IMG/VR virus record: IMGVR_UViG_3300005859_000005
Span: 1 to 30,373 of that record
Direction: 5' to 3' (one strand)
Length of the DNA stretch: 30,373 bases
Shown here in pieces: positions 1-30,373 of this stretch. The translations under genes were made by a program, and so were the position numbers. Under the pieces are notes generated by a model. That model made no database searches, was not told where the DNA came from, and saw nothing but the letters and a program-made list of their open reading frames with translations. The first letter of the stretch is position 1. The number at the start of each line of letters is the position of its first letter.

Positions 1-11
1 ATTGTAAATAC

Positions 12-38
12 AAAGATAAAGATGTCTTTAAATTTGTC
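12..38 (+). promoter_or_regulatory. Rudiviral promoter (purine-rich BRE, TTTAAA TATA box, GTC)
   Basis: AAAGATAAAGATGTCTTTAAATTTGTC, 32 nt before ATG 70; near-identical TATA+GTC copies at 1563-1574, 2103-2114, 2583-2594, 3711-3722. Confidence 0.75.
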
Positions 39-69
39 ATAAGATATATTAAATTTTAAGTGTTTAAAG

Positions 70-327
70 ATGGTCTTAACTAAAAAGATAGAAAAAGTTG
101 AGACATATTTTTGTGAAAAATGTGGTAAAAAATTGCTAGAAAAATTGTCAAACAAAAATAATATAATTTATGATGGATGTGACCATTACATTTGGTATAT
201 TCTTCCATATGATTATTACGAAAAACAACCGACTGTGGAAGGTAAAAAATATGTAGAATGGTTAAAGAAAAATAAAGAAGTCATGGTATATGCTGGAAAA
301 GAGATATATTTTCTAATGAAAAAGTAA
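70..327 (+). CDS. Small putative Zn-binding protein (CxxC...CDHYxW), rudiviral terminal-region family; candidate anti-defence protein
   Basis: CEKC and CDHYIW motifs shared with 1094..1435; own promoter; T-tract after stop. Confidence 0.75.
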   Translation: MVLTKKIEKVETYFCEKCGKKLLEKLSNKNNIIYDGCDHYIWYILPYDYYEKQPTVEGKKYVEWLKKNKEVMVYAGKEIYFLMKK

Positions 328-3338: not shown

Positions 3339-3431
3339 GTTAAATGTTCTTTTTTTCTATACCTATTTTTTATCTTCCTGAAAAGATATATATTTGTCAT
3401 AATTTTTCAATTAATTTGGGATGATGAGAAA

Positions 3432-3617
3432 ATGGTTCTGACCGAGGAACAAAAAGAAATTTTAGAAAGAATGTATAATAGAACAGATTACATTATCCGA
3501 AAATATAAAGAATATTTAGATGCATTATCTGAATTTGATAAAACTGGTATATTGAAAATTCATGGGAAAGTTCTTTATGTAAGAAAATACAATAATCAAG
3601 AAAATGAAAATATGTAA
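3432..3617 (+). CDS. 61-aa protein; possible antitoxin mimic (Phd/Doc-type neutralising helix)
   Basis: IIRKYKEYLDALSEFDKTG amphipathic helix; promoter 3387-3398 and GGGATGA SD; function inferred. Confidence 0.55.
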   Translation: MVLTEEQKEILERMYNRTDYIIRKYKEYLDALSEFDKTGILKIHGKVLYVRKYNNQENENM

Positions 3618-3757
3618 TTTTGTTTTCTTTTTTTATGTCAAATTTTTCTCTTGTTTGTTATAATATTACAAATGCTTAAAAAAATTTTGAATTCGAAAGA
3701 TAAAGAGGGTTTTATATTTGTCCTAAAAAATATGTAATTTTAGGGGCGAAAAAGCCC

Positions 3758-4486
3758 ATGACACAAGAAACCCAAGATAGGAAGTTTGAGATAAAGACAA
3801 TAAAAGAAGTAAAATATCTTCCTAATGTTTTCCAACTAAGACATCAAAATGGACAAATATCTACAATAACTACAAGTTATGGAGATTTTATAGATTGTAG
3901 ACCGAAAGAAGACAAGTTTTTTGGATGTCTTGAACTAAGAGATTATGAACTTAAGAGAACAAAAAATGTATATTATGTTCCTGGGATTCCGATATTCTAT
4001 ATAACATTTGAGAAAAGTTTATTCCAAAGTAAAAAACATGTAGAACCTATTGTTACAACAATTTTAACAAATTTTGGACTAATTGATAGAAATTTATTAA
4101 TTACATATACTGGACATGAAATACAAATGTATTCAAGATTCCATAAAGCACAATTACATGAATTTCCATTAATTCATGTCCATAAAAATTTAGAATTTTA
4201 CGAAGTTCCAAAAGCAGACCCTAAAGTTGAATATGACTTTGAGGACACAGACACAATAACAATCTATGATTATGAAATTAAATTTCCAGACATAGTTATG
4301 GTCTCGGAATTATATTCGGAGCCAGGGAAAGCATATCTAGTGTATCCAGAGAATAATATGGAAATAATTGTAACATCTTCCAAAAATGAAGGATTTACAA
4401 TTATGTTACATAAAGATAAATATTATCTTATAACTCATCCAGAAATAGAAGAAGAAAATGAAGGTGAAATGAATGGGAATTCTTGA
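3758..4486 (+). CDS. acrIIIB1: AcrIIIB1-like anti-CRISPR protein (SIRV2 gp48/ORF249 family)
   Basis: C-terminal YEVPKADPK...TITIYDYEIKFP...GKAYLVYPE...KDKYYLITHP matches my recollection of AcrIIIB1; size (242 aa) and position fit. Confidence 0.7.
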   Translation: MTQETQDRKFEIKTIKEVKYLPNVFQLRHQNGQISTITTSYGDFIDCRPKEDKFFGCLELRDYELKRTKNVYYVPGIPIFYITFEKSLFQSKKHVEPIVTTILTNFGLIDRNLLITYTGHEIQMYSRFHKAQLHEFPLIHVHKNLEFYEVPKADPKVEYDFEDTDTITIYDYEIKFPDIVMVSELYSEPGKAYLVYPENNMEIIVTSSKNEGFTIMLHKDKYYLITHPEIEEENEGEMNGNS

Positions 4487-6146: not shown

Positions 6147-6668
6147 ATGTATATAGTTTTACGGGAATTGGATAAAGAAAAGTTTAGAAAAAATGTTATT
6201 ACATGGTTAGATGCGGATAATGTTATTGAAAGTTGTTATACTGATTTTAAGTACATTTTAACAGAAACAATAATCCAAATGATTTCTGAAACTGTAGAAA
6301 AAGATGATTGGAATTTACAATATTTTAATGACAAAGAATTAGAAAAATTGTTTAAAGCGTTTATGGAAAATTCTAAAATTACAGTACAATTAGTTAAACA
6401 GATTAATGAGATAAATTATGCATTTGATGAAATTATTGTTGAATTTGATTTATCAGAATTTGAGAAGAAAGAAATTGCAGAAATATATCTTGATAATATA
6501 CTTAATGAATGTCAATATCTAGAAAGATGTATATTTGATAGTTTGGAGGAAAAAAATGTAGATTTAATAGCAGAACTTCTTAATGACCAGACTTATCAAA
6601 TTCTAAGTCCCGAAGAAATAAAGAACAAATTTAAGAGCAAAATAGAGAAAATTATAAATAACGAATAA
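6147..6668 (+). CDS. Acidic helical hypothetical protein, tandem paralog 1
   Basis: Shares ELDK, ESCYT, TIIQM, AFMENS, LSPEEI with the next ORF. Confidence 0.8.
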   Translation: MYIVLRELDKEKFRKNVITWLDADNVIESCYTDFKYILTETIIQMISETVEKDDWNLQYFNDKELEKLFKAFMENSKITVQLVKQINEINYAFDEIIVEFDLSEFEKKEIAEIYLDNILNECQYLERCIFDSLEEKNVDLIAELLNDQTYQILSPEEIKNKFKSKIEKIINNE

Positions 6669-6755
6669 TTTATATTTTAAAAAATCTCTAAATTAAAATT
6701 CAAAGGCATTTTTATATTTGTCATAATTTATAAATTGATTCGAGAGGATAAAAAA

Positions 6756-7304
6756 ATGATAAATCAAATCGAAAATATAGTTTTAAAAGAATTAGATAAA
6801 TATAAATTTAATGAGAATATAGAATCAGGATTAAAATGGGATAATATTAGTGAAAGTTGTTATACAAATTTCAAAGATATTATAGTCAAAACAATAATCC
6901 AAATGGTTCATGAAATTTTAGATGGAAATGATTGGAAAATTAAAGCTTTTGAAAAGAATAAGAAAGAAAAAATATTTAATGCATTTATGGAAAATTCTAG
7001 TTTTGAAGTTTTATTAAGTAAATCAGATAACACATTAAAAAAAGTTATTGTAGAACTTAATTTCACAGAAGACGAGAAAAAGAAAATAGCAAAAACATAC
7101 ATAGACTCATTGTTAGAAGGTTACTATTATTTAGATATATGTATTTTTATTGATTTAGACGAAATAAATGTAAATACAATTTCGAAAGTTTTAAGTGACG
7201 AAGTTTATAGATTGTTAAGTCCAGAAGAAATAATAGAGAAATTTAAAGATAAAATAGAAGAGGCTATTAATGTAATAGAAGGTTATAACGAAGATTTTGA
7301 ATAA
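6756..7304 (+). CDS. Acidic helical hypothetical protein, tandem paralog 2 (start moved to ATG 6756)
   Basis: GAGAGGA SD before ATG 6756; promoter 6711-6722; paralog of 6147..6668. Confidence 0.8.
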   Translation: MINQIENIVLKELDKYKFNENIESGLKWDNISESCYTNFKDIIVKTIIQMVHEILDGNDWKIKAFEKNKKEKIFNAFMENSSFEVLLSKSDNTLKKVIVELNFTEDEKKKIAKTYIDSLLEGYYYLDICIFIDLDEINVNTISKVLSDEVYRLLSPEEIIEKFKDKIEEAINVIEGYNEDFE

Positions 7305-8230: not shown

Positions 8231-9423
8231 TATTGTTCTCCATTAATCATCTTCTTTCTTAAGACGTATATAATTCCTCCAATTATAGGCAATAATAATA
8301 TTCTTAATATTGTATATATGAGATTTCCTTCTATTACAAAGTTATAGAATACTTGGTTTTGTAGTCCTAGATAAAAGAATATAAATATCTGTAGTGCTAA
8401 ACTTGTTAGTACTATTGTAAATATTAATTTATTATTTGTTAATTTTAAAAATGCAAAACTTACAATAAGGAAATTCCAGAAAATGAATAATATACCAGTA
8501 AATCCAAATGAGATTGTAAATCCTAAAACATTTTCTAAAACATTAGTAATTGTATCAACAATAAAGATTAATAATAAAATGTTAGGCGTTAATTTAGCAA
8601 ATTTTTCTGGGAGAATTCTATCAAATGCAAAGCTTTGAATTAAACGACTTTGAATTAATGAATTTACAAAAAGATAGCTTAGATACCAGATTGGAAATAA
8701 AATAAACAATATATTCAAATTAGAAAAACTATCTAATATTGATAATATTGTAACTACTAAATAACTTCCAAAATATCCAATTTTCATGGCTTTATTTACG
8801 TTTTTTGATTCTCCAGCTATATAACTAATTGCATTTATGAACAGAAACATAGACAAGTCAAATAGTAAGGCTGAAAGTAAAGTATTCGATATTATGAAAC
8901 TTTGAAATTCAAAATGAAAGCCTGAAATTGGAAGAAATATTGATACAAGTATCTGTAGAATAGCTAATCCATCTACTATATATCCATATATTGATTTTTT
9001 AACTATACTGACAAGAGTTATTACAAATAATAATTCTGAAATTAAGAATTTATCAATTAGTGAAATATTAAAATTCATAAGTACCAAATCTGTCAAGACT
9101 GGGGCTGAGAATATATACGTTAGCCATAACGAGATTCCGAAAATTGTATAGAATTTCGGAGAAAATGTATTTCTAATGTAAGCATAATCTCCACCGTTAA
9201 GAGGAATTTTCTTAGTTAGAATATAATACATTACGAGAAGTGGAATTTCAAAAATAGCTCCTAATATTATAGCTAATAATAGATTTACATTTTTCATCAT
9301 TTGAGAGACAAAAATTGGATAACTTATTCCGCTCAAAATTCCCATGTAAAGAAGATTGATAGAAAAAATATCTAATGAATTGAAACTTTTAATAATTCCC
9401 GAACTTTTTCTTTGGAATTCCAT
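8230..9423 (-). CDS. APC-superfamily (amino acid permease-like) transporter (SIRV2 ORF399-like)
   Basis: Many TM segments; PLNGGDYAYI, YIAGESKN and SRLIQSFAFDRILP motifs; TAATG overlap with the TGT-like gene. Confidence 0.85.
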   Translation of the reverse strand: MEFQRKSSGIIKSFNSLDIFSINLLYMGILSGISYPIFVSQMMKNVNLLLAIILGAIFEIPLLVMYYILTKKIPLNGGDYAYIRNTFSPKFYTIFGISLWLTYIFSAPVLTDLVLMNFNISLIDKFLISELLFVITLVSIVKKSIYGYIVDGLAILQILVSIFLPISGFHFEFQSFIISNTLLSALLFDLSMFLFINAISYIAGESKNVNKAMKIGYFGSYLVVTILSILDSFSNLNILFILFPIWYLSYLFVNSLIQSRLIQSFAFDRILPEKFAKLTPNILLLIFIVDTITNVLENVLGFTISFGFTGILFIFWNFLIVSFAFLKLTNNKLIFTIVLTSLALQIFIFFYLGLQNQVFYNFVIEGNLIYTILRILLLPIIGGIIYVLRKKMINGEQ

Positions 9424-10077: not shown

Positions 10078-11138
10078 AGCCCGTCTAAACTATTAAAAAG
10101 TTGTTTTTTTACAATTTCATAACTAAAGTTTTCTATCCAAAAGTTATAATTTTCCTCAATTTTTGCTTTATAATCATCTAGATTGTCTAAAACGTTAAGT
10201 ATTTTGTCCACAGCTTTGTCTACACATATTTCTACACCTTTTCCAATATGGATGGAATTATCTGGGAAAATTGTTGGTTTTCCGCATGAATCCACAAGTA
10301 AATCTTCTAGTTGTGAAGGAAAATATTCTTGCCAAGCTCCGCCTTTTGTAGCTACAACTGGGATTTTTGACACAAAAGCTTCCAGACCATTTAACTCAAA
10401 ACTTCCGCCTCTACTAGTTAACAAATACAAGTCAGATATTCTATACATCTTTACAATATTGTCGAAATCTGTATTTCCAGTAACATTAAACATTTTCAAG
10501 TCTTGGAAATCTGTCCTAGTCCATCCTGACTTGACCAAGAAGTAGATGTCATTTCTTTCTTTCTGGAGTTGTTGAGCTATTCTATGGAATATATCAGCTC
10601 CTTTTCTAAAATCTGAATGCCATAACGATATGAAAATTAGTTTAATTTTCTTCTCATTTTTAATTTTTTCTATATAACGTATTTGTTCATCTACTTTTAA
10701 TTCCTCATCTTTTACTAAAAGTCTTTCTTTGAAATTATGTACAACTTTGAAAATTGGAATTTTTAGTCCAGAGTTTTTGAAAGTATTTACAGACCATTCT
10801 GAATTAACTATTAATCTATCCGCATAATTATTTGCATAATCTATAAATTTTTCAGATATTTTATCACTATCAGCTACTTCAACTCCTACAATTGCACTGG
10901 TTTTTGTTCTATATTGTTCAAAAAACGAAAATTCTACTTTTGTCCATCTCCACATAGAATAGAAAAAGGGATGAATTATTGAGATTGGATATCTAAATGG
11001 TGTAAATTGATAGAAAGATAACGCTGGAATTTCGTAAACTATGTATTTTTCTTTTAGCATTCTCACATGTTCTTTCGCTACAAATTTAAAAGAAACGTCC
11101 TGATGTTGTGGATAAACGTAATAAATTGGAACCGTCAA
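10074..11138 (-). CDS. GT-B (GT4) glycosyltransferase (SIRV2 ORF356-like)
   Basis: RKGAD and SRGGSFELNGLEA (EX7E-like) motifs; TTG start with GGTGAGG SD. Confidence 0.92.
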   Translation of the reverse strand: MTVPIYYVYPQHQDVSFKFVAKEHVRMLKEKYIVYEIPALSFYQFTPFRYPISIIHPFFYSMWRWTKVEFSFFEQYRTKTSAIVGVEVADSDKISEKFIDYANNYADRLIVNSEWSVNTFKNSGLKIPIFKVVHNFKERLLVKDEELKVDEQIRYIEKIKNEKKIKLIFISLWHSDFRKGADIFHRIAQQLQKERNDIYFLVKSGWTRTDFQDLKMFNVTGNTDFDNIVKMYRISDLYLLTSRGGSFELNGLEAFVSKIPVVATKGGAWQEYFPSQLEDLLVDSCGKPTIFPDNSIHIGKGVEICVDKAVDKILNVLDNLDDYKAKIEENYNFWIENFSYEIVKKQLFNSLDGL

Positions 11139-11145
11139 TTTGTCC

Positions 11146-11751
11146 TCACCAACTTATTAGAACAAATTCTGGAATATGTTTGAAAATTTGCGGAATATCT
11201 TCAAGTGTAAATTCCATTCTTTTTTCTCCACATGGAGTTTTCACATAATGTACAGTTCCTAATTTCAAGACATTTAAAGGTAGAATATGGTCATGAATAA
11301 AAATGTCTATTGGAATTTCTTTATAATACTCTTTATCAAGATATGTATTTAATACAATTTCTAATATTGGAATTTGATTTTTCCTGAATATGTAATTTGT
11401 TCCAGAACAAAATGGTCTTATTTCGTTAGCCCATGAATAATAAAGCCAATAACATAATGTCATTATTCTATTTCCGAGGTCTATATTACGCAGACCGGGG
11501 ACAATCAAATCACTATCTATAATTGCAAATGTTGTATCGTCTTGATTTTTAGCTACATCTAGAATTTTCAGTAATTGCTTAGCTATTCTAATCCAACGAA
11601 TGTCACTTTTTGTCTCATTCCAGATAATTTTATCTCTAATTTTCTCTTCAATTTCTGGAATTAAATCGTTAAACGTTCTATCAACAACTACATAATCAAA
11701 ATCTAACTCTGGTAAATGTTTTGTATATCCCACAAATGTAAAGACTTTCAT
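11146..11751 (-). CDS. GT-A-like glycosyltransferase (SIRV ORF176/209-like)
   Basis: YVVVD and IIDSD (DxD) motifs; synteny. Confidence 0.8.
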   Translation of the reverse strand: MKVFTFVGYTKHLPELDFDYVVVDRTFNDLIPEIEEKIRDKIIWNETKSDIRWIRIAKQLLKILDVAKNQDDTTFAIIDSDLIVPGLRNIDLGNRIMTLCYWLYYSWANEIRPFCSGTNYIFRKNQIPILEIVLNTYLDKEYYKEIPIDIFIHDHILPLNVLKLGTVHYVKTPCGEKRMEFTLEDIPQIFKHIPEFVLISW

Positions 11752-11811
11752 AATTATCTCTCAATTTCATGACAATTTTAAATATTTTCAAACAAACATG
11801 AAAATAACCCC

Positions 11812-11910
11812 AATATACCATATAAATAATATAAGGAATATTGTGTTGTTTACATGTTTTCATGGGAATTTAAGAACAATAAGGACAATTAATATACATA
11901 ATATGATATA
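11812..11910 (+). promoter_or_regulatory. Modular upstream element, copy A
   Basis: Ungapped match to the reverse complement of 17201-17299; first 32 bp identical to the reverse complement of 26155-26186. Confidence 0.75.
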
Positions 11911-11954
11911 TGAGATATATGGTTTTATTTATGTCATTTTAGAAATTTGAACTT

Positions 11955-12764
11955 ATGAGTGTAACATATACATCTATATCGGAATTATTAGCCTCACCAT
12001 TTCAACGATTAACTTCTAGTATGTGGAATACGGCAATACTTCTTCTAGTTCAACTTTACGAAACAGGGGGAAATACTGTGACATCTATTCTAAAAAATGG
12101 TAATTTAACAATTCCAGGTTCTATAACTGCTAGTTCTGGAAATTTTTACGAAGAAATTTATGTAAATGGTCAGCCAGTTCTTACGGAACAAGACCCGATA
12201 TATATAGCGGGGTTTATTGCCACAGCTAATCAACAGATAAATCAAATTCTATATTCAAATCAACAGTTATACTATTCAATTACCAAACTTCCAAAAGAAA
12301 TTAATAACATAATTACACAGAATTTATATAATCTTTCTGATTCATTATATTCCTCAATTAATTTAATTTCTAAAAAAATATCAATTCCAGTACAAGATAT
12401 AGTTTATTCTATTACCGATTCTTTATCTTATATGCTTACATATGTTTATTTGGCTACAGTTAATTTAGTTAATACATTTAACAAACTTTTTCTATATTTA
12501 TCCCCTCCTACTATAGAAGGTTTACAGTTAGATGTAGATACAATTCCTTCACCTTTATATTCTGGACAAATGTTAGAAACTGTAAGAATAATTTTACAAA
12601 ACTTGAGTAATTATATCATTTATATTGGAAATCAATTATATCATAATTTTCCACTTTTACCTAATGATAGTATAGAATTACACGTAAACAATCCAACTAA
12701 TGTTTATGCTTGGGCTACTGGAAAATGTAAAGTATATGCTTTATTTGAAGTAATACAGAGTTAG
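11955..12764 (+). CDS. Conserved rudiviral protein (SIRV ORF269-like), probable minor virion/fibre-associated protein
   Basis: 269 aa; synteny; N-terminus resembles 15375..17156. Confidence 0.8.
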   Translation: MSVTYTSISELLASPFQRLTSSMWNTAILLLVQLYETGGNTVTSILKNGNLTIPGSITASSGNFYEEIYVNGQPVLTEQDPIYIAGFIATANQQINQILYSNQQLYYSITKLPKEINNIITQNLYNLSDSLYSSINLISKKISIPVQDIVYSITDSLSYMLTYVYLATVNLVNTFNKLFLYLSPPTIEGLQLDVDTIPSPLYSGQMLETVRIILQNLSNYIIYIGNQLYHNFPLLPNDSIELHVNNPTNVYAWATGKCKVYALFEVIQS

Positions 12765-12772
12765 GTGATATT

Positions 12773-13255
12773 ATGTCTATAAATTTCAAAGACTATTTCT
12801 GTAAGTTAGAATGTTGTTATTGGCATGAATTTGAACAAGCTTATGGAAAATTAAATGTAAAAGATAGAACAGTTACAATAATTGGTAATGATTGTGGAAG
12901 TACGGCGTTATATTTCATTTTACGTAATGCTAAGAAAATCATTGGGTTTGAAAAAGAAGAAAAATTAAATCAATTGTTCAAAGAAAAAGTTTGTAAGGAT
13001 TTTCAGATTTGTGATAAAGTTGAGATACATGGGGGATGGACTGGAAATCAATATCCAAACACTGACATTTTCGTGATTGATTGTGAAGGATGCGAATCAA
13101 AACTTGATATTTCTCAATTACAGAAATATAAACAATTCTGTATAGCTATACATGATTGGACTGAAAATAGATTTGATTTAATGCGAAAATTATACGGAGC
13201 TATCCTAACTTTTATAAGTAAGGATAATAAAGAATTTGTATTTTGTAAATTATGA
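12773..13255 (+). CDS. SAM-dependent methyltransferase (FkbM-like; SIRV ORF158-like)
   Basis: IIGNDCGSTA motif I, IGFE, IDCEGCE. Confidence 0.85.
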   Translation: MSINFKDYFCKLECCYWHEFEQAYGKLNVKDRTVTIIGNDCGSTALYFILRNAKKIIGFEKEEKLNQLFKEKVCKDFQICDKVEIHGGWTGNQYPNTDIFVIDCEGCESKLDISQLQKYKQFCIAIHDWTENRFDLMRKLYGAILTFISKDNKEFVFCKL

Positions 13256-15244
13256 AATACATTGGTTATTTATAATTTTTGCATTTCCATAAATATATAT
13301 TGCACCAGTATTTTGTTTACAAATTAAATTTTCTATTACAGCATTATCATATAAATATATATCACCAACATTATTTTCTATATATAAAGTTTTTATATAT
13401 GCATTATTATATAATTGAATTTTACCATTATTAGTTTCTATATTTAATATGTTTACATATGTATTATTATTTAAATATACATAATTATTTTCTGTTCCTA
13501 TATCAATTGTATTAATAGAAACATTATCTTCTATATTTATTCCGTTATTGTCAATTTCTATATTAATTGAATTTACAGAAGAATAATTTTCTAAAAACAT
13601 TGTTTTATTATTAATCTGAACATTTATTGTATATATTTTAGAATAATCATTTAAATATATGCCTCCATTTTCTTGTTGTACATTAATTATAGTAATAGAA
13701 CTATTGTCATTTAAATCTATTCCGCCATTATCAATTTTTATATTAATTGTTCCGATTAACGTATTATCATTAAGTAATATTGTATTATAATTAACATTTA
13801 TGTTTAATGTATGTATAGAAGAATTGTCATATAATTCAATTAATTCATTATTTGTATTTATATTTAAAAAGTTTATATATGAATTGTTATATGGAAATAT
13901 AAATCCATTATTATAATTAATTATTAAATTTGCAATTGTACCATAAATAAAAATATCACTTGAATTACTATAAATTAAAAAGTTTTTAATATAAATATTT
14001 TGAGAAATTGTAGGACTAATTTGTAAATTTGTAATTAAGACATTCAAAAATGTAGATATCGAATTTAATAAATTATAAAATTCATAGCCATAACAACTAA
14101 ATAAAAAGTATTGATTATAATTAAAAGTTAAAAGTTGATTAACATTATAAACTATATCTACAAATTGTAAAGCTTTCACGATTTCATCAGACTGGACATG
14201 TGAAAGATTTTTTTGTAATTGTATATTAACAAAATTTGCTAATTCTATAATTGCATCAATTAAAGAGTTAAAATAGTCTGCAGTTAATGGAAGTCCTTTT
14301 TTAGCATGAATAAGTGGTTTGAACATGTAAGGTTGGAAATTTTTATAGAAATCATAAAAATCAAGAATTGCATAAGTTATATTTTGCGGATATGGAAATT
14401 GAGACAAATATTTTATGTATTTATAAATACTATAAGCTAGATATAAATCTTGTACAATTTCATTCCAAAGTTTTGAAGATATTATAGAATGTTTTTTTGG
14501 CGGGGTTAATAATTTTTTAATTTGATAGACCGATACACATGAATAATGTTTACAAGATAATGGTGAAACAATATTATATGGAATATTATTTGAATTTAAG
14601 AAATCTATAACTTGTTGGTCTGCAAAAAATACTATTTGTGTATAGGATATTATGCCTGGGTTTGCACATATACCTGATGTTGCAAATTTTACAGTTATAT
14701 TATCTACATATACAAACATTTGGCAAGCTGTTGTTACTAAATAATTATTTAAATTGTTTAGAAAAACTGCTACATAAAAAGTCGAATTATTACAATAATT
14801 TGTTACATTTATTGTTTGGACTTGACAGCCTGAACATGTTCCTACTGTTACCGAATATCCATAGTTACTTTCTATGTTCATATTTTGGATTAGAGAAATT
14901 GTCGTATTTTTAAAAGACATAGTTAAATTTTGTTCGATTTCACAAACATTGGTCTTATATAAATCAATTCCTTGTGGATAAATCATTATTAACATATAAT
15001 ATCCTTTATAATTTGACAAATTTATGTTAAAATCCGTTCCAACTTTAGCAAATCCAAAGGCATCATGATTTATACAAAAAGAACCGGCATTTCCATGACT
15101 AAATGGACATTTTGAGAATAGAAATATAACTAAAGAATTTACAGATAATGAAAATTGTAAAGATGTAAAATTTACAGGATATACTGTAAACATACCAATT
15201 ATTCCAAAATTTTGATTTAATTGTACACAATAATTTGAAGACAT
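13250..15244 (-). CDS. Extended fibre/receptor-binding-like protein (SIRV2 ORF309-like core, N-terminal extension, C-terminal beta-helix repeats)
   Basis: SCKHYSCVSVYQIKKLLTPPKK core begins near aa 230; 20-aa Asn/Ile repeats at the C-terminus. Confidence 0.75.
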   Translation of the reverse strand: MSSNYCVQLNQNFGIIGMFTVYPVNFTSLQFSLSVNSLVIFLFSKCPFSHGNAGSFCINHDAFGFAKVGTDFNINLSNYKGYYMLIMIYPQGIDLYKTNVCEIEQNLTMSFKNTTISLIQNMNIESNYGYSVTVGTCSGCQVQTINVTNYCNNSTFYVAVFLNNLNNYLVTTACQMFVYVDNITVKFATSGICANPGIISYTQIVFFADQQVIDFLNSNNIPYNIVSPLSCKHYSCVSVYQIKKLLTPPKKHSIISSKLWNEIVQDLYLAYSIYKYIKYLSQFPYPQNITYAILDFYDFYKNFQPYMFKPLIHAKKGLPLTADYFNSLIDAIIELANFVNIQLQKNLSHVQSDEIVKALQFVDIVYNVNQLLTFNYNQYFLFSCYGYEFYNLLNSISTFLNVLITNLQISPTISQNIYIKNFLIYSNSSDIFIYGTIANLIINYNNGFIFPYNNSYINFLNINTNNELIELYDNSSIHTLNINVNYNTILLNDNTLIGTINIKIDNGGIDLNDNSSITIINVQQENGGIYLNDYSKIYTINVQINNKTMFLENYSSVNSINIEIDNNGINIEDNVSINTIDIGTENNYVYLNNNTYVNILNIETNNGKIQLYNNAYIKTLYIENNVGDIYLYDNAVIENLICKQNTGAIYIYGNAKIINNQCIS
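13262..13921 (-). repeat. 11 degenerate 60-bp (20-aa) coding tandem repeats
   Basis: e.g. INTNNELIELYDNSSIHTLN / IKIDNGGIDLNDNSSITIIN / IETNNGKIQLYNNAYIKTLY; columns align across consecutive 60-nt lines. Confidence 0.9.
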
Positions 15245-15374
15245 TACTAAATCATTATATACTTATTTTCGAATAAATACTTTAAATCTATTTCAATATC
15301 TAATACATTATCAATTCCAAAATTAAAAATAGAATTAGGATAAAACAAATTAAGGAATTTTGTATTTAACGTTA

Positions 15375-17156
15375 TTACGCTAGAATTATTGTTTTTTGTG
15401 GTTGTGAATTTGAAGGCATTACATTATTTGGTGGCAATTTTCTAGCTCTAGTCCAATAGAAATATCCAATATATGTTACATTATATGAATTGTCAAACAT
15501 TATAATTCCTGAACCGTTTGGAGTTATTGTGGAACTCCAGCTTGTTGATAGTTGTAAATTTAATTGTGGTAATTCAATAATTGGTGTTGATATAGAACTA
15601 CCATAAAATTTAATTCCTGAACTTGTTACAATTGCTTGATAGAAATTATAGCCTGAATTTGTAAACATAGAAATTGTACCTGCAGATTCATAATTTCCAT
15701 TATAATAAATATATGAATCATTATAATATGGACATATGTATGTGAAATAATAGTTATAGTTATCAAAATTTCCTAGAAATCCAATACCTTGACATCCACC
15801 TTGTCCATTAAAATATTGTACATTTTCAAAAATTTCATTTACATTATTCGCATTTGAAAAATTTATATAAATCTGTGTGTATGAATTTTGTTGATTATTT
15901 AACATTAAAATATATCCTGGTATCGTTCCATTTTTTGGAATAAATTGAATTGTCGAATATATATCCGAATCAATTTGTAAATTATTAGCAATATATGAAG
16001 TTCCCATGGCATTTATATATGCGTCAAAAACATAATTACCATTATCATATTCTGTATTATAATATGCATTAATTCCAGTATAAGGATATTGAATAGAATT
16101 TCTAACAAACATATAGATTGTCATTGACCCGTTGGCAGGAATTGAATTTGGTAATAATACCCAAATTAAAACATTTGATAAATCTAAATTGTATTGAGAT
16201 ATCCAAGCATATAATGGGGTATTACACCGAACATCTAAACAGAATTGTAGATTTAGAAGTTGAGATGGACTGGATAAAATGTTAGATAAATCCAATTGAA
16301 GAAGTTGTTGAAATTGTAACGGAGTTGGGTCTGGTTCGTTATTTGTTATAGTAATTGTATAAATATTAATAGATGAAGTTGGAGTTGTTGTTTTAGTAAA
16401 AGATGTTATAGTTTCAATAAATTCAATTTCTAAGCCTAATAAAGTAGAAGTTTGTGCTGATAATTGAATTTGTGATAATGAATTTGTTGATAATTCTAAA
16501 CATTTTTTTGGAATTTTTGAAGTTTTAGATATTGATTTATTTCCAAAGAAAGAATTTGATGTTATTTTTAGACAATTTTTAGGCATTAGATAAATAGAAT
16601 TGTTTATTTGAATAGAAGAATTTCCTAGGTTTTTAATAATAATTTCATTCCAATTTTGTAAATATTGTGGATTTAAATAATTTTCAATTAATTGTTGAAC
16701 ATTTACAGTTCCAGAAAATGTAAATTGAGTTCCAGCAATTTGATTAGGAGCTACAATTTTTAGGGTCTTATTAGGAATTAGAAGTTCTATTTGTTTATAT
16801 AATTGTGGTAAATTTATTTCAAAATTTGGAAATTGTAATATAATATTTTCTAATTCTATAGAAGGTTTATTTGACATGTCTAGAAACGGTTGTTGTTTCC
16901 CTTGACCGAAAGTATAAGCTAACGGCTGTGACAGATTGTATAAAACATTATAACCATTTACTTTTAAAGCCGAAACATATAGATATTTTGCAATTACTTT
17001 GTTTAGATTTTGTAAATTCCCATTTTGATAATATTTGAGAAGTTTAGCTGAGCCATATTGGTTTAAAAACAAGAGATTTTTTACAAAGTTATTCCAGTCT
17101 TGTACTGTCAAGTATTCTAATGGAAGTTTAAACTTAACTGGATATGGAGTAGGCAT
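15375..17156 (-). CDS. Minor virion protein (SIRV2 ORF564-like) with a DUF2341-like domain
   Basis: YTITITNN...QQLLQL...PLYAWI...IWVLLPNSIPANGSMTIYM pattern; Thr/Ser linker; synteny. Confidence 0.85.
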   Translation of the reverse strand: MPTPYPVKFKLPLEYLTVQDWNNFVKNLLFLNQYGSAKLLKYYQNGNLQNLNKVIAKYLYVSALKVNGYNVLYNLSQPLAYTFGQGKQQPFLDMSNKPSIELENIILQFPNFEINLPQLYKQIELLIPNKTLKIVAPNQIAGTQFTFSGTVNVQQLIENYLNPQYLQNWNEIIIKNLGNSSIQINNSIYLMPKNCLKITSNSFFGNKSISKTSKIPKKCLELSTNSLSQIQLSAQTSTLLGLEIEFIETITSFTKTTTPTSSINIYTITITNNEPDPTPLQFQQLLQLDLSNILSSPSQLLNLQFCLDVRCNTPLYAWISQYNLDLSNVLIWVLLPNSIPANGSMTIYMFVRNSIQYPYTGINAYYNTEYDNGNYVFDAYINAMGTSYIANNLQIDSDIYSTIQFIPKNGTIPGYILMLNNQQNSYTQIYINFSNANNVNEIFENVQYFNGQGGCQGIGFLGNFDNYNYYFTYICPYYNDSYIYYNGNYESAGTISMFTNSGYNFYQAIVTSSGIKFYGSSISTPIIELPQLNLQLSTSWSSTITPNGSGIIMFDNSYNVTYIGYFYWTRARKLPPNNVMPSNSQPQKTIILA

Positions 17157-17200
17157 TAATTATAATTTAAAAATTGTTAAAAATAAAGTGACATAACTTA

Positions 17201-17299
17201 TATACAATATTATGTATATTATGTGATGTTATTGTTCTTAACTTTTTACGTTTAATCAAAAACAACACAATATACCTTATATTATATATATGGCATATG
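17201..17299 (-). promoter_or_regulatory. Modular upstream element, copy B
   Basis: Inverted copy of 11812-11910; same 143-nt distance to ATG 17156. Confidence 0.75.
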
Positions 17300-17306
17300 A
17301 GTTACG

Positions 17307-18125
17307 TTATGTTACTTTGAAATTTTTCATATATTCTATAACTTTCATAATATCAAGATGTGTATCTTTTTGGATTTGTAATATGTAATTTTGGTCTTGT
17401 AAAATCTGTAATATTTTATCTTTGTTTTGTACAAAGAAATTATAGAGTTCTGGATGATTTTGATACCAATCATTTTTTCCATTTTTCAAGTCATTATCAA
17501 TTTCTCCAAGAAGAAACGCTAATTGTTTAGTATCAATTTCTTTTCTAATTGGTTTAAATATTACACCAAGTACAGAGAAATAGGGTTTATATTTGAAAAG
17601 ACACATGTTAAAATTTCTTCCTTCTTTACAACTTATTTTCTTTGGATTGTAAATTTTAGCTACTAAGCCCTCAAGTCTTTCTTTAGTTATAACATTGATT
17701 AAATCATCTACATTAAGATAAATTTCTGGAAACCAATTCCAAATTCTACTGTCAATCCTTAAAGGGTGTACATATTTTCCAAGTTCTTTGTCAAAGACAT
17801 CATAGATGATAAATTGCGGAATTTCATTTTGATGGATTTGTAATGCTGACGTCTTTTTATGTACAAGTTCTCCATGAATAATATAGTTTTCATGGTCTTT
17901 TAAATAGTTAATAACTTCCTCAATTCCTGGAACTTTCATAAAGAGTTCTTGGAAAGATTTGTCATGTGGAATATCTTTTCTAGTGTGAATTTTTAATTCA
18001 TTTTCATATTTCAAACATATATGTGTTCCATCATATTTTATTTGATAATATGACTTTTCTTCTAGATTTTTTAAGTCTTGATAACTTATACTTTCCGCTT
18101 CGTAACGACATGGATTCAGTTCCAT
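17307..18125 (-). CDS. ATP-dependent polynucleotide ligase-family nucleotidyltransferase (RNA or DNA ligase)
   Basis: Motif I KYDG, Ia TRK, III HGELV, IIIa FIIYDV, IV EGLVAK, V FKYK; helical C-terminus. Confidence 0.85.
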   Translation of the reverse strand: MELNPCRYEAESISYQDLKNLEEKSYYQIKYDGTHICLKYENELKIHTRKDIPHDKSFQELFMKVPGIEEVINYLKDHENYIIHGELVHKKTSALQIHQNEIPQFIIYDVFDKELGKYVHPLRIDSRIWNWFPEIYLNVDDLINVITKERLEGLVAKIYNPKKISCKEGRNFNMCLFKYKPYFSVLGVIFKPIRKEIDTKQLAFLLGEIDNDLKNGKNDWYQNHPELYNFFVQNKDKILQILQDQNYILQIQKDTHLDIMKVIEYMKNFKVT

Positions 18126-22403: not shown

Positions 22404-22605
22404 CTTTCTCTTCCTCCACTTTTACTTGCATTTTTCTCATTTCTTTTACAATTTTCACTACTTCTAAGGCTTTTTGAAAAACTTCACTTTTTCTAACATG
22501 TTCATCATCACATGTCGCTAAAGCCATAGTCAAATCGTCAAGAGCTAGATATAGCTTAGCTATTGTCTCTGTATTCGAATTTGACTTTCTTTTGTTTTCT
22601 GACAT
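22396..22605 (-). CDS. Conserved rudiviral 69-aa protein (SIRV2 ORF69-like)
   Basis: Overlaps the resolvase 3' end; LYLALDDLTMALATCD. Confidence 0.75.
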   Translation of the reverse strand: MSENKRKSNSNTETIAKLYLALDDLTMALATCDDEHVRKSEVFQKALEVVKIVKEMRKMQVKVEEEKDG

Positions 22606-22924
22606 CTTGACCTAATTTGTATATTCTGACACTTTTATGTCTTTTATAATGTACAATTACCAAAGGCTGACATGAACAAAAATTAAATATTTCACAAAAT
22701 TCAAACAGTTTTTCTATTTGAAAAATATCTACAATAACAAAATCTTTGGATGTAGATTTAACTTCTATTGGATAAATTGTATTGTCTTTCGTAGCTATAA
22801 TATCTGGAATTGCCTGTTTTCCAGTTCCAGATACTGGTATCCTAATAGCGTTATAACCATTTTTATCTAAAAACTCTAATGTTTTATATTCATAATATTT
22901 GCCAGATTGTCTAATATTCATCAA
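22556..22924 (-). CDS. hjc: Holliday junction resolvase (archaeal Hjc family)
   Basis: GKYYE, RIPVSG, PDIIA and IEVKST PD-(D/E)xK motifs. Confidence 0.95.
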   Translation of the reverse strand: MMNIRQSGKYYEYKTLEFLDKNGYNAIRIPVSGTGKQAIPDIIATKDNTIYPIEVKSTSKDFVIVDIFQIEKLFEFCEIFNFCSCQPLVIVHYKRHKSVRIYKLGQDVRKQKKVKFEYRDNS

Positions 22925-25857: not shown

Positions 25858-26091
25858 TTATCTTTTCATATTTCTTAAATCGGTTACTACAGTTTTGTAA
25901 AAAAGAACTAAAAGTTTAAACTTGTTATGATTAAAAATTATTTTTTCGTTATAGGTAAGATTAGGAATTATATATTTTTCAAATTCAGTTGTCTTCATTT
26001 GTAACGCTTTTTCTCCATAACTTTGTACAAACATATGTGCAAGCTCAACAATTTTTTGTTCTATTTTTCCCATACTCATTTTTTTCCCCAT
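25858..26091 (-). CDS. Hypothetical basic protein
   Basis: 77-aa ORF with plausible composition. Confidence 0.6.
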   Translation of the reverse strand: MGKKMSMGKIEQKIVELAHMFVQSYGEKALQMKTTEFEKYIIPNLTYNEKIIFNHNKFKLLVLFYKTVVTDLRNMKR

Positions 26092-26154: not shown

Positions 26155-26186
26155 CAATATTCCTTATATTATTTATATGGTATATT
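26155..26186 (-). promoter_or_regulatory. 32-bp dyad, copy C of the modular upstream element
   Basis: Exact reverse complement of 11812-11843. Confidence 0.75.
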
Positions 26187-26228: not shown

Positions 26229-26597
26229 ATGTCAGTTAAAGATGAATTTTTAAATATTTTCGGACCTGTAAGAATTGCAATAGATAAGATTAGAGAACTA
26301 GAAAATAGAGGACAGATTTACGGTCTATCTCGTTATTTACCACATTCAATTATTGTTTTAAAAAATGCAGAAATACCTATGGTAGTAGATTTATATATAC
26401 CAGGATTTACTTTCTATTTCCAGTTTCTTATAGCAAAAGATAAGAAAACTAACACAATTTTTATAGCAGATTTTCGAGTAGTTTATCCACAGCCTTACGC
26501 TAAACAAGTAGACTCAACATATCAGAAATTCAGTGAAACTGATGATACGAATTTAGATAATTTAAGAGATGAGATGGAGGGATTAGAAGATGAATGA
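26229..26597 (+). CDS. Conserved rudiviral protein (SIRV ORF110-like); start moved to ATG 26229 (122 aa)
   Basis: The upstream extension in the ORF track is antisense to 25858..26091 and intergenic; MSVKDEFLNIFG onward looks coding. Confidence 0.75.
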   Translation: MSVKDEFLNIFGPVRIAIDKIRELENRGQIYGLSRYLPHSIIVLKNAEIPMVVDLYIPGFTFYFQFLIAKDKKTNTIFIADFRVVYPQPYAKQVDSTYQKFSETDDTNLDNLRDEMEGLEDE

Positions 26598-27867: not shown

Positions 27868-28185
27868 TTATAATTTTTTAACCAAATCCCTTATTAAACT
27901 TTTATCTGCAATTGTAAGTTTTAATTCTGGATTGTTAAGGATACTTGTACTTCCTGATTCCTTAACAAGTATAGCTAAATCCCTATGTAATAATCTTGAA
28001 CGATTAGGTCTAATATGATAAAACTCCAGATGAATAGATAGTCTACCAGTTTTCATTCCGCATATTGGACATCTGTAATTGTCAAAGTGTTTTTCCATAT
28101 GTCTCTTAAATTCTGTTTCGTTCTTTAATTCTATCTTACATAAATAACAATAGAATTTTTTCGGAACTCCTTTTATAGCTCCCAT
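27868..28185 (-). CDS. Double C2H2 zinc-finger protein, tandem paralog
   Basis: CYLC-x12-HMEKH and CPIC-x9-HLEFYH; RDLAILVKE tail. Confidence 0.85.
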   Translation of the reverse strand: MGAIKGVPKKFYCYLCKIELKNETEFKRHMEKHFDNYRCPICGMKTGRLSIHLEFYHIRPNRSRLLHRDLAILVKESGSTSILNNPELKLTIADKSLIRDLVKKL

Positions 28186-28203: not shown

Positions 28204-28521
28204 TCATAATTTTTTCGAAAAATACCAAATTCTTTCTTTTTGTGAATGTGTTAATTCTATATTTAATTCCTTTAAGATTTTTGTAGTCCCGGCTTCCTTA
28301 ACAAGTATTGCTAAATCTCTGTATAACAGTCTAGAATGACTAGGTCTAATATGGAAAAGTGTGAGATGTTTCGATAAATCTCCAGTTGGAAATAGGCATA
28401 ATGGACATCTTAAATTGTCGTAATGGTTATATATATGTTTCTTAAATTCTTTTATAGACTTAACTTCTGTCTTACAAATTGGGCAATAATATATTTTTTT
28501 CATTCCCTTACCTATTCCCAT
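28204..28521 (-). CDS. Double C2H2 zinc-finger protein, tandem paralog (start moved to 28521, 105 aa)
   Basis: CPIC..HIYNH and CPLC..HLTLFH; GTC 20 nt before ATG 28521; N-terminus aligns with the paralog. Confidence 0.85.
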   Translation of the reverse strand: MGIGKGMKKIYYCPICKTEVKSIKEFKKHIYNHYDNLRCPLCLFPTGDLSKHLTLFHIRPSHSRLLYRDLAILVKEAGTTKILKELNIELTHSQKERIWYFSKKL

Positions 28522-28575
28522 AAAATATATTATTTTATATGACATTTATAAATGTTTTTTTACTTTTCGATTTTT

Positions 28576-29589: not shown

Positions 29590-29616
29590 TTTATAATTGT
29601 CATGACACTAATAAAT
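29590..29616. promoter_or_regulatory. Overlapping bidirectional TATA+GTC promoters centred on the TGTCATGACA palindrome
   Basis: TTTATAATTGTC-AT-GACACTAATAAA; ~20 nt to ATG 29583 (-) and ATG 29620 (+). Confidence 0.65.
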
Positions 29617-29619
29617 TTC

Positions 29620-29790
29620 ATGGGTTTGTTAATTTATGAATGCCCATATTGTAAGAAAGTTTACAAAACTGTAAACAGTATGAAAGCACATTTGAGAAAA
29701 TATCATGGAGTTTCCAGAATGGATAACGTAAAAAGAATTTCGACAAGAACATATAATTATGTAGAAACAAAAATTGAAGATAATGATTAA
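29620..29790 (+). CDS. Single C2H2 zinc-finger protein (SIRV ORF55-like position); start probably 29620
   Basis: YECPYCKKVYKTVNSMKAHLRKYH; promoter spacing. Confidence 0.85.
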   Translation: MGLLIYECPYCKKVYKTVNSMKAHLRKYHGVSRMDNVKRISTRTYNYVETKIEDND

Positions 29791-29854: not shown

Positions 29855-30259
29855 TTAGCTTACGTATCCGTTAGGATTGCCTACAATTATATTAGTTACA
29901 GCATCAAGAATTTCTGGATTAGCGTTAAAAGCTGATATATAGTAAGCCTTTAATCCAGCTATCATATTCGTTAATGCTTGTCCGCCTCCAAGCCTATTTA
30001 AAGCTCTAGCAATTTTCATACCATAACCCTGATAAATTGCCCTACTAGGCCCAGTAACACCGTATTCAGAAAGTACGGCAGATACTTGTTCATTTACAGC
30101 TACGAATTTAGGAGCATTGGCTTGGAAGTTTTGCTGGGCTATTGGAGCTACATTAGTCAATATTGTGTTAGCTACAGTTGGATTGGAAAATGCTGTAAAT
30201 TTGGCTTGCCATTTCGCATATCTTTGTGCATAATCTCTTGGGGTATGACCTCTTGCCAT
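29855..30259 (-). CDS. Major capsid protein (SIRV ORF134 family)
   Basis: MARGHTPRDYAQRYAKWQAKFTAFSNPTVA...GLKAYYISAFNANP...GYVS, 134 aa. Confidence 0.97.
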   Translation of the reverse strand: MARGHTPRDYAQRYAKWQAKFTAFSNPTVANTILTNVAPIAQQNFQANAPKFVAVNEQVSAVLSEYGVTGPSRAIYQGYGMKIARALNRLGGGQALTNMIAGLKAYYISAFNANPEILDAVTNIIVGNPNGYVS

Positions 30260-30373
30260 GTCTGTTCAATTTACAATTTTTCTTCCTAAAATTTAAATTT
30301 TCACGTTCTATAACAAATATAATGTATATTATTTGTACAAATTGAGGAAAATTTAAAATTCGAAATTTTTACG

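What the first reader, a model, noticed from the sequence alone, without database searches (positions are those of the whole stretch)
11812..17299. ~100-bp modular element exactly 143 nt upstream of two virion-type genes
Seen: 11812-11910 (+) and 17201-17299 (-) align without gaps as CCATATAwATAATATAAGGwATATTGTGTTGTTT-N18-TTAAGAACAATAA-N7-TAATATACATAATAT. The spacers differ in sequence but keep their length, and both copies start 143 nt before the ATG (11955 and 17156). Inference: a multi-site, spacing-dependent cis element such as a late-gene activator platform or structured RNA. As inverted repeats they could also invert the 5.3-kb fibre cassette between them.
Basis: partly seen in the sequence, partly recalled or inferred. 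Interest (0 to 1): 0.72.

Follow-up and report, generated by a model that had tools for sequence, protein, structure and literature searches.

The report
Two-box upstream promoter module of a rudivirus
The repeated ~100-bp element is the upstream control region of two facing gene clusters in an archaeal rod-shaped virus: a palindromic promoter box shared across the virus group plus a lineage-specific second box 73 bp further upstream, so it is real gene-control DNA of a largely known kind, not an RNA or an inversion switch.

Summary
A third copy of the first block (26155-26186, -) was missed.

The window is a Yellowstone-type rudivirus contig. The two genes are homologues of SIRV2 ORF269 and ORF564.

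The last block is a 23-bp palindromic box found exactly 63 nt before the ATG of these two genes in about 20 rudivirus contigs. The same box precedes the capsid, ORF399, ORF488 and ORF110 genes. In SIRV1 promoter 134 it lies where the upstream footprint of the host activator Sta1 was reported.

The middle block is a recurrent AGAACA accessory motif. Only the first block is lineage-specific. It is a diverged second box 73 bp upstream, seen only in this virus and one sister contig.

Blocks and spacing are conserved far above synonymous sites, while the spacers differ between the two copies. This supports a spacing-constrained, multi-site protein-binding platform.

A structured RNA is not supported. 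Inversion of the cassette is not supported either: all junction-spanning contigs and all relatives show one orientation, and no invertase domain was found among the ORFs scanned.

Verdict: a new variant of a known kind, of moderate interest.

The parts
11811..11851 (+). Distal module, copy 1. It holds block 1, which is box variant B: a 33-bp imperfect palindrome of the form CAATATnCC...GGnATATTG at 11811-11843. It also holds the tail TGTGTTGTTT. The box centre at 11830 lies 125 nt from the ORF269 ATG and 79 nt from the ATG of the divergent ORF201.
11852..11869 (+). N18 spacer of the ORF269 copy. It matches the other copy at only 5 of 18 positions, but matches the sister virus at 17 of 18.
11870..11882 (+). 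Block 2 (TTAAGAACAATAA). This is an AGAACA-type accessory motif that recurs 2-12 nt upstream of the box in several rudiviral promoters.
11892..11914 (+). Proximal box A, the family-wide 23-bp palindromic promoter box. It starts 63 nt before the ORF269 ATG.
11923..11935 (+). Core promoter of ORF269: a T-rich TATA-like stretch followed by GTC, centred about 27 nt before the ATG at 11955. This spacing implies a leaderless mRNA (inferred).
   Evidence: the GTC rule for SIRV promoters is from my own knowledge of Kessler et al. 2004, which I could not read here
11771..11785 (-). Core promoter (TATA-like plus GTC) of the divergent ORF201, the SIRV2 ORF176 homologue (ATG at 11751).
17260..17299 (-). 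Distal module, copy 2 (block 1 / box variant B plus tail). It begins 14 nt after the ORF272 stop codon. The box centre at 17281 lies 125 nt from the ORF593 ATG.
17242..17259 (-). N18 spacer of the ORF593 copy. It matches the sister virus at 15 of 18 positions.
17229..17241 (-). Block 2 of the ORF593 copy.
17197..17219 (-). Proximal box A of the ORF593 (ORF564 homologue) promoter. It starts 63 nt before the ATG at 17156.
17176..17188 (-). Core promoter (TATA-like) of ORF593.
26155..26186 (-). Third copy of block 1 (box variant B), in the divergent region between ORF122 (ORF110 homologue, ATG at 26229) and ORF77 (ATG at 26091). Its centre lies 61 nt from the first ATG and 77 nt from the second. 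It is positionally orthologous to a canonical box in SIRV9, which lies 62 nt from the ORF110-homologue ATG.
30302..30329 (-). Degenerate box upstream of the major capsid protein gene. It starts 70 nt before the ATG at 30259, as in SIRV1, SIRV2 and SIRV3. The contig ends 44 nt further upstream.

Best explanation
The element is not an independent unit. It is the upstream regulatory region of two convergently transcribed gene clusters, ORF269 plus a methyltransferase on one side and the ORF564 and ORF309 homologues on the other. Both clusters use the same promoter architecture, which is why the regions appear as inverted repeats.

Reading towards the gene, each copy contains:
1. A distal box B. 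This is a diverged, wider palindromic copy of the rudiviral promoter box.
2. An 18-bp locus-specific spacer.
3. An AGAACA accessory motif.
4. The canonical 23-bp palindromic box A at -63 to -41.
5. A T-rich TATA-like element about 27 nt before the ATG, implying a leaderless mRNA.

Proposed mechanism (inferred): a dimeric DNA-binding activator occupies box A next to BRE/TATA and helps TBP and TFB load. The host winged-helix protein Sta1 is the only candidate with experimental support on the orthologous SIRV1 promoters. A viral C2H2 zinc-finger protein is not excluded. A second dimer on box B, 73 bp away (about 7 helical turns, so on the same face), would add cooperative occupancy.

At the ORF269 locus, box B also keeps the divergent ORF201 promoter supplied with a box at its ancestral distance. 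The two-box form probably arose as a 74-bp tandem duplication at the ORF564-type promoter and was later copied to the ORF269 promoter.
For: Shown directly:
- Box A starts exactly 63 nt before the ATG of the ORF269 and ORF564 homologues in about 20 rudivirus contigs. It starts 70 nt before the capsid gene in SIRV2 and SIRV3 and in SIRV1.
- The same box precedes ORF399, ORF488, ORF110 and ORF335 homologues. Every strong hit is intergenic and upstream of a gene.
- In SIRV1 promoter 134 the box (11072-11094) lies 30 nt upstream of the published Reg2 oligonucleotide (11102). Its first 16 nt fit the published ATNT-N8-WNAT site. This matches the reported second Sta1 footprint '~30 nt upstream' of the core promoter. 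Promoters 134 and 399, both Sta1-activated, carry full boxes (PMC1635249).
- Block 1 matches the box consensus at 18-19 of 23 positions. Matches of at least 17 of 23 give 17 window hits against 2.6 expected.
- The third block-1 copy sits where SIRV9 has a canonical box: 61 versus 62 nt from the ORF110-homologue ATG.
- Box B of the + copy lies 79 nt from the ORF201 ATG. The single shared box of SIRV9 lies 80 nt from the orthologous ATG.
- Two-box promoters recur elsewhere: SIRV1/2 P564 (59 bp apart), SIRV9 capsid promoter (61 bp), and SIRV2/3 P399 (124 and 115 bp).
- Selection is visible. Against the sister contig, four-fold degenerate sites are 67% identical (n=313), whereas the element is 93% and 85% identical. 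Between the two copies in the window, block 1 matches at 32/34, block 2 at 13/13 and the 29-column box A segment at 25/29, while N18 matches at 5/18 and N7 at 2/7. There are no indels in any of the four copies.
- AGAACA lies within 22 nt upstream of the box in 11 of 56 unique contexts, against a 0.9% background.
- The duplication origin has moderate support: the local alignment of the two 74-nt units at the ORF564-type promoter has p of about 0.005.
Against: - No binding or transcription data exist for this virus.
- The Sta1 link rests on geometry plus a very loose consensus that matches 11 times per kb in SIRV1. The figure showing the footprint could not be read.
- The better-defined Sta1 site on the host sso0777 promoter (TTATT, CANGNA, TTATT; PMC2175319) is not evident in the box on reading the sequences by eye; no scan was run.
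- Box B has a wider half-site spacing than box A, so it may bind a different factor.
- The 73-bp spacing is not shared by other two-box promoters (59, 61, 115 and 124 bp).
- The distal module is known from only two related viruses, so spacing conservation rests on four sequences forming two orthologous pairs.
- Retention of both flank distances is an automatic result of a tandem duplication and does not by itself show selection.
- Transcription start sites are inferred, not mapped.
Confidence: 0.6

Rival explanations
1. The distal module has no cooperative role at the ORF269 and ORF593 promoters. It is an evolutionary by-product: a 74-bp duplication followed by copying between the two similar promoters. 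Where it is used at all, it serves only the neighbouring promoter. Under this view each box acts alone, as a single bidirectional upstream site: ORF201 in the + copy, and ORF122/ORF77 in the third copy.
For: - Box B of the + copy lies 79 nt from the ORF201 ATG, as does the shared box of SIRV9 at 80 nt.
- The third copy stands alone with no box A nearby.
- A tandem duplication preserves both flank distances automatically. The duplication signal has p of about 0.005.
- Most relatives manage with one box and a 75-131-bp intergenic region.
Against: - The - copy of box B has no divergent gene to serve. It follows the ORF272 stop codon, yet it is 34/34 identical in the sister virus while synonymous sites are 67% identical.
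- Block 2 and the tail of block 1 are also conserved between the two copies.
- No indel has been accepted in four copies, even though the spacers between the two copies match no better than expected by chance.
Confidence: 0.2
2. Block 1 is itself a core promoter (an A/T-rich TATA-like sequence). It would drive an upstream transcript: either a long 5' leader for ORF269 and ORF593, or a short non-coding RNA.
For: - Block 1 contains TATA-like runs in both orientations.
- The - copy, as a single strand, folds into a long hairpin with z = -4.7. The sister copy gives z = -2.7 and the SIRV2 P564 region z = -2.7.
- Two substitutions in the sister copy keep pairs as G-U on the sense strand.
Against: - The + copy folds no better than shuffles (z = -0.4), as does its sister (+0.3).
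- The consensus fold is weak: -8.6 kcal/mol, with one nominal compensatory pair.
- There is no Rfam match.
- Block 1 lacks the TATA-plus-GTC signature seen at the other promoters of this genome.
- The hairpin potential is expected from two related palindromic boxes.
Confidence: 0.07
3. The two inverted copies are recombination sites that invert, or allow exchange of, the 5.5-kb segment between them.
For: - The copies are inverted repeats flanking 11810-17321.
- In another metagenome a contig, 100% identical to the window, begins and ends exactly at these repeats (11810-17321). This could reflect an assembly ambiguity there.
Against: - The gene order and orientation are the same in SIRV1, SIRV2, SIRV9, the sister contig and a 40.7-kb co-occurring relative.
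- Every ORF269 promoter in about 12 loci abuts the ORF176-homologue start. No ORF564 promoter abuts it: most abut the ligase-like gene end, and two loci (L007, L012) have a different upstream sequence that was not examined.
- Four junction-spanning contigs from three samples all carry the reference junctions, each with its own locus-specific spacer.
- The longest exact shared run is only about 15 nt.
- No invertase or integrase domain was found in the window ORFs scanned.
Confidence: 0.03

Closest known systems
Sta1-responsive promoters 134 and 399 of SIRV1 (Kessler et al. 2006, PMC1635249)
   Same: Box A of the window is orthologous in sequence and position to the palindrome in these SIRV1 promoters. 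That palindrome lies 30 nt upstream of the core-promoter footprint oligonucleotide in SIRV1 promoter 134, and 63 nt before the ORF399 ATG. The reported architecture is also the same: an upstream site plus a core-promoter site, with activation by helping TBP and TFB.
   Different: The paper proposed only a loose 16-bp consensus. It did not, as far as I could read, describe a 23-bp box at a fixed distance across many genes and viruses. The window adds a second, diverged box 73 bp upstream together with an AGAACA motif. Sta1 binding to any of these sequences is untested here.
SvtR (SIRV1 gp08) operator upstream of the ORF1070 gene
   Same: It is a viral regulator site located far upstream of TATA (about 80 nt) at a structural-gene promoter, with proposed spreading or cooperative binding (PMC5569661).
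   Different: The SvtR consensus is not present in the element beyond chance (66 hits against 46 expected across the window; none fall on the blocks). SvtR represses, and its main target is a different gene.
Two-site upstream activating sequences of archaeal activators such as Ptr2 of Methanocaldococcus jannaschii
   Same: Two upstream palindromic sites next to BRE/TATA, from which a dimeric activator recruits TBP. This comes from my own knowledge and from the discussion in PMC1635249.
   Different: The organism, protein family and site sequences are different. Nothing here tests TBP recruitment.
Aca8-type early (anti-defence) regulatory sequence of rudiviruses (PMC11065993)
   Same: It is also a long conserved promoter-associated sequence repeated within one rudiviral genome. 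It is present in this window at seven places in the left arm.
   Different: The sequence is different, the genes are different (terminal early genes) and the position is different: it overlaps BRE/TATA and the leader rather than lying upstream of them.

Membership tests
Rudiviral palindromic promoter box (ATATACATWATAT followed by a TrTATrAG-type right half) | Sequence match to the box | tested here: met
   Box A matches with 0 mismatches at 11892 and 17219. Block 1 matches only at 18-19 of 23 positions and has a wider palindrome.
Rudiviral palindromic promoter box (ATATACATWATAT followed by a TrTATrAG-type right half) | Fixed position: starts 63 nt before the ATG, just upstream of the TATA-like element | tested here: met
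   The distance is 63 nt in both window copies, in both sister copies, and in all ORF269 and ORF564 homologue loci found. In the sister ORF564-type copy the start codon was re-read by eye from the sequence line.
Rudiviral palindromic promoter box (ATATACATWATAT followed by a TrTATrAG-type right half) | Found upstream of the same orthologous genes in related viruses | tested here: met
   Found in SIRV1, 2, 3, 4, 5, 9, 10 and 11 and in several metagenomic contigs. Not detected in ARV2 with the same matrix.
Sta1-dependent viral promoter | 16-bp site ATNT-N8-WNAT | tested here: met
   The first 16 nt of the box fit. However, the consensus matches 11 times per kb in SIRV1, so this carries little weight.
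Sta1-dependent viral promoter | Upstream protected region about 30 nt upstream of the core-promoter region | tested here: met
   The SIRV1 box is at 11072-11094 and the Reg2 oligonucleotide starts at 11102. This is a match of geometry only; the footprint figure is not held.
Sta1-dependent viral promoter | TTATT / CANGNA / TTATT motifs required on the host sso0777 promoter (PMC2175319) | tested here: not met
   Read by eye from the printed sequences; no scan was run. The box does not show this arrangement. TTATT occurs only in the TATA-like element, in the reverse complement of block 2 and in box B.
Sta1-dependent viral promoter | Sta1 binds the promoter and stimulates transcription | not testable with these tools
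   Needs EMSA or footprinting and in vitro transcription.
SvtR operator | Consensus ATnnTTCAAnAnnnnnAAAATG | tested here: not met
   No hit on any block. Window-wide hits with up to 3 mismatches number 66 against 46 expected.
aCcr1 / SIRV2 gp21 box | AGTATTA motif in the promoter | tested here: not met
   There are four matches in the window, none in or near the element.
Structured cis-RNA | Stable fold shared by all copies, with covariation, or an Rfam match | tested here: not met
   z = -0.4 and +0.3 for the ORF269 copies. The consensus energy is -8.6 kcal/mol with one nominal compensatory pair among four sequences. There is no Rfam hit.
Invertible DNA segment | Inverted repeats flanking the segment | tested here: met
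Invertible DNA segment | Both orientations present in populations or relatives | tested here: not met
   Only the reference orientation appears in relatives and in four junction-spanning contigs from three samples.
Invertible DNA segment | A site-specific recombinase encoded nearby | tested here: not met
   No recombinase domain was found in the ORFs inside or next to the segment, nor in the other window ORFs scanned. A Holliday-junction resolvase homologue (SIRV2 ORF121) lies at 22556-22921.

The most novel reading that the evidence does not exclude
The 23-bp palindromic box, with its AGAACA partner and optional second box, may be the operator of a single dedicated regulator. That regulator could be a conserved viral C2H2 zinc-finger protein or host Sta1. 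It would define the whole non-early (structural and assembly) regulon of Icerudivirus and Usarudivirus. In this lineage the operator would have been doubled into a spacing-locked, looped two-operator switch. If so, this would be the first sequence-defined late-gene regulon and enhancer-like architecture for a crenarchaeal virus.
Probability: 0.15. Interest if true: 0.6.

Novelty: new variant of a known kind. Interest (0 to 1): 0.4.

Why it matters
Regulation of archaeal virus genes is known from only a handful of factors and sites. This analysis turns a loose published Sta1 consensus into a sharply defined 23-bp palindrome. The palindrome sits at a fixed position and has a recognisable gene set: capsid, ORF564, ORF269, ORF399, ORF488, ORF110 and ORF335 homologues.

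It also shows that two-box versions have arisen repeatedly. The window carries the clearest case, with blocks and spacing under visible constraint. That gives a compact 150-bp fragment for footprinting, in vitro transcription and spacing mutants in the Sulfolobus/SIRV system.

It does not reveal a new kind of element.

Tried and rejected
- A metagenome-wide scan for block 1 used a pattern that was too short (17 nt).
- A scan of species-representative genomes for the exact 20-nt palindrome found no Sulfolobales hit. The one archaeal hit of possible interest (an Aeropyrum MAG) has 56% GC and showed no tblastx similarity to the window. No host regulon could therefore be proposed.
- I considered ORF77 as a lineage-specific autoregulator binding block 1. 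It belongs to a PHROG of unknown function, has no Pfam hit and has a partial homologue in SIRV9. The box beside it is positionally orthologous to a canonical SIRV9 box. The idea was dropped.
- A 50-codon ORF spans the + copy (11798-11950). The - copy has no counterpart, so I reject it as coding.
- I considered a terminator role for the T-run after block 1. The T-run is not conserved: T5 in one copy and T3-T4 in the others.
- Homology of the flank upstream of block 1 between the two copies is not significant (p about 0.1).
- Kessler et al. 2004 and Guilliere et al. 2009 are not held in the library. No held paper contains the box sequence as text.
- PDB sequence searches for ORF269 and ORF593 gave nothing useful.
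Full report
**Observation.** The two copies exist and align without a gap from block 1 to the start codon.
- The quoted string begins at 11818 (+) and 17293 (-), 137 nt before the ATGs at 11955 and 17156.
- Block 1 as a 26-nt pattern occurs three times in the window against 0.00 expected.
- The last block, extended by 10 nt, occurs four times with up to 3 mismatches against 0.07 expected.

**What the window is.** The window is IMG/VR contig 3300005859_000005. It is 25% GC and 75-79% identical at the nucleotide level to Yellowstone Sulfolobus islandicus rod-shaped viruses (Usarudivirus). It runs in the opposite orientation to the SIRV2 record.
- ORF269 (11955-12764, +) is 71% identical to SIRV2 ORF269. 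Its function is unknown.
- ORF593 (15375-17156, -) is the ORF564 homologue. Several rudivirus records call this protein a structural protein.
- The two genes head convergent clusters, so identical promoter architecture necessarily appears as an inverted repeat.

**The promoter-proximal part is a family-wide box.**
- The pattern ATATACATAATAT plus a TrTATrAG-type right half was found in 21 viral-contig stretches.
- In every case it starts exactly 63 nt before the ATG of an ORF269 or ORF564 homologue. In SIRV2 and SIRV3 it also occurs 70 nt before the major capsid gene.
- A position matrix built from these sites also finds it before the SIRV1 capsid gene (70 nt) and before ORF399, ORF488, ORF110 and ORF335 homologues in SIRV1, SIRV2 and SIRV9.
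- It was not found in ARV2.
- Every strong hit is intergenic.
- In the window, the capsid gene has a degenerate copy at the expected 70 nt.
- The box ends 8 nt before a T-rich TATA-like element centred about 27 nt before the ATG. It therefore occupies roughly -63 to -41 of a probably leaderless transcript (inferred).

**Relation to known work.** In SIRV1 promoter 134, the published Reg2 oligonucleotide (core-promoter footprint of the host activator Sta1) maps to 11102. The box lies at 11072-11094.
- This is where the paper places its second footprint, '~30 nt upstream', and the box's first 16 nt fit the published consensus.
- Promoters 134 and 399, both Sta1-activated in vitro, carry full boxes.
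- This is a match of geometry only. The consensus is loose (11 matches per kb). The better-defined Sta1 site of a host promoter is not evident in the box by eye.
- The SvtR and aCcr1 motifs are absent from the element.

**The middle block.** Block 2 contains AGAACA.
- That hexamer lies within 22 nt upstream of the box in 11 of 56 unique rudiviral contexts, against a background of 0.9%.
- It appears at several promoter classes: P269 in three genera-level groups, P399 in SIRV1/2, and P564 in the window and a co-occurring relative.
- It is therefore an ancestral accessory motif, not something particular to this element.

**The distal block.** Block 1 is the only lineage-specific part.
- It is itself a 33-bp imperfect palindrome. 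It matches the box consensus at 18-19 of 23 positions, best in reverse orientation, but with more widely spaced half-sites.
- Its invariant core was found only in the window and in sister contig 3300005859_000008 among viral contigs.
- GenBank rudiviruses match the element only from block 2 onward.
- Three closer relatives of ORF593 have a single box and 75-81-bp intergenic regions.
- The third copy stands alone between ORF122 (ORF110 homologue) and ORF77. It lies 61 nt from the ORF122 ATG, where SIRV9 has a canonical box at 62 nt.
- In the ORF269/ORF201 divergent region, box B lies 79 nt from the ORF201 ATG. The single shared box of SIRV9 lies 80 nt from the orthologous ATG.
- Two-box promoters also occur at SIRV1/2 P564 (59 bp), the SIRV9 capsid promoter (61 bp) and SIRV2/3 P399 (124 and 115 bp).

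**Constraint.** The sister virus differs from the window at a third of four-fold degenerate sites (67% identity, n=313).
- Against that, the element is 93% (ORF269 copy) and 85% (ORF593 copy) identical between the two viruses.
- Between the two copies within a genome, block 1 matches at 32/34, block 2 at 13/13 and the 29-column box A segment at 25/29. N18 matches at 5/18 and N7 at 2/7.
- All four copies have the same length.
- This supports selection on the blocks and on their spacing, although only two independent lineages are available.

**Origin.** At the ORF593 promoter, the 74 nt ending in box B and the 74 nt ending in box A align better than shuffles (p about 0.005). The alignment includes the 3' end of the ligase-like gene against the block 2 region. 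This suggests a tandem duplication. How the module reached the ORF269 promoter is unresolved.

**Rivals.**
- RNA: the ORF593 copies fold well as single strands (z = -4.7 and -2.7), because two related palindromes pair with each other. The ORF269 copies do not (z = -0.4 and +0.3). The consensus structure is weak and there is no Rfam match.
- Inversion: one contig from another sample spans exactly 11810-17321. However, overlapping contigs from that sample and a third sample carry the reference junctions with their locus-specific spacers. All relatives share the orientation, and no invertase domain was found.

**Conclusion.** The element is a two-box, spacing-constrained upstream promoter region. 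Its proximal parts are common to the virus group and probably correspond to a known activator site. Its distal box is a lineage-specific elaboration. Which protein binds the boxes, and whether the two boxes act cooperatively, remain inferences.

Noticed in passing
window 6-83, 1542-1619, 2082-2136, 2562-2639, 3382-3434, 3690-3767, 6696-6767: There is a family of 55-72-nt promoter-associated repeats of the form AAAGATAAAGATG..TTTAAATTTGTC..TTTTAGG in front of the left-arm genes. It matches the Aca8-type early / anti-defence regulatory sequence described for rudiviruses (PMC11065993). An Aca8-like HTH ORF lies at 564-731.
   Followed up: partly
window 17307-18125 (-): ORF272, immediately upstream of the - copy, matches the RNA ligase and ATP-dependent DNA ligase adenylation domains (Pfam). 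It is present in SIRV9-like viruses and absent from SIRV1/2.
   Followed up: partly
window 13427-13749, inside ORF664 (13250-15244, -): Direct repeats with a 60-nt period (20-residue units) lie in the extended C-terminal part of the ORF309 homologue. This protein is twice as long here as in SIRV2.
   Followed up: no
window 6147-6668 and 6756-7304: Two adjacent paralogous genes, about 70% identical over 248 nt. Each is preceded by an early-type promoter repeat.
   Followed up: no
window 8298-8320 (+): A box-like site (18 of 23 positions) lies inside the 3' end of the permease gene. Its centre is 79 nt upstream of the ATG of the queuine tRNA-ribosyltransferase-like gene (8230). It may be an internal promoter site or a chance match.
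   Followed up: no
L261 (sample 3300001684), equal to window 11810-17321: A contig from a different metagenome is 100% identical to the window and starts and stops exactly at the two inverted copies. Neighbouring contigs of that sample overlap it in the reference arrangement.
   Followed up: yes
window 27868-28185 (-), 28204-28545 (-), 29602-29790 (+): There are three C2H2 zinc-finger proteins. Two are tandem paralogues. The third is the ORF55 homologue, next to the capsid gene. All are candidate viral DNA-binding regulators.
   Followed up: partly
L262 positions 1-99 (ENA ERZ27249342): The first 99 nt of this 98%-identical contig match window 10820-10722 in reverse orientation. This is probably an assembly artefact at a contig end.
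   Followed up: no
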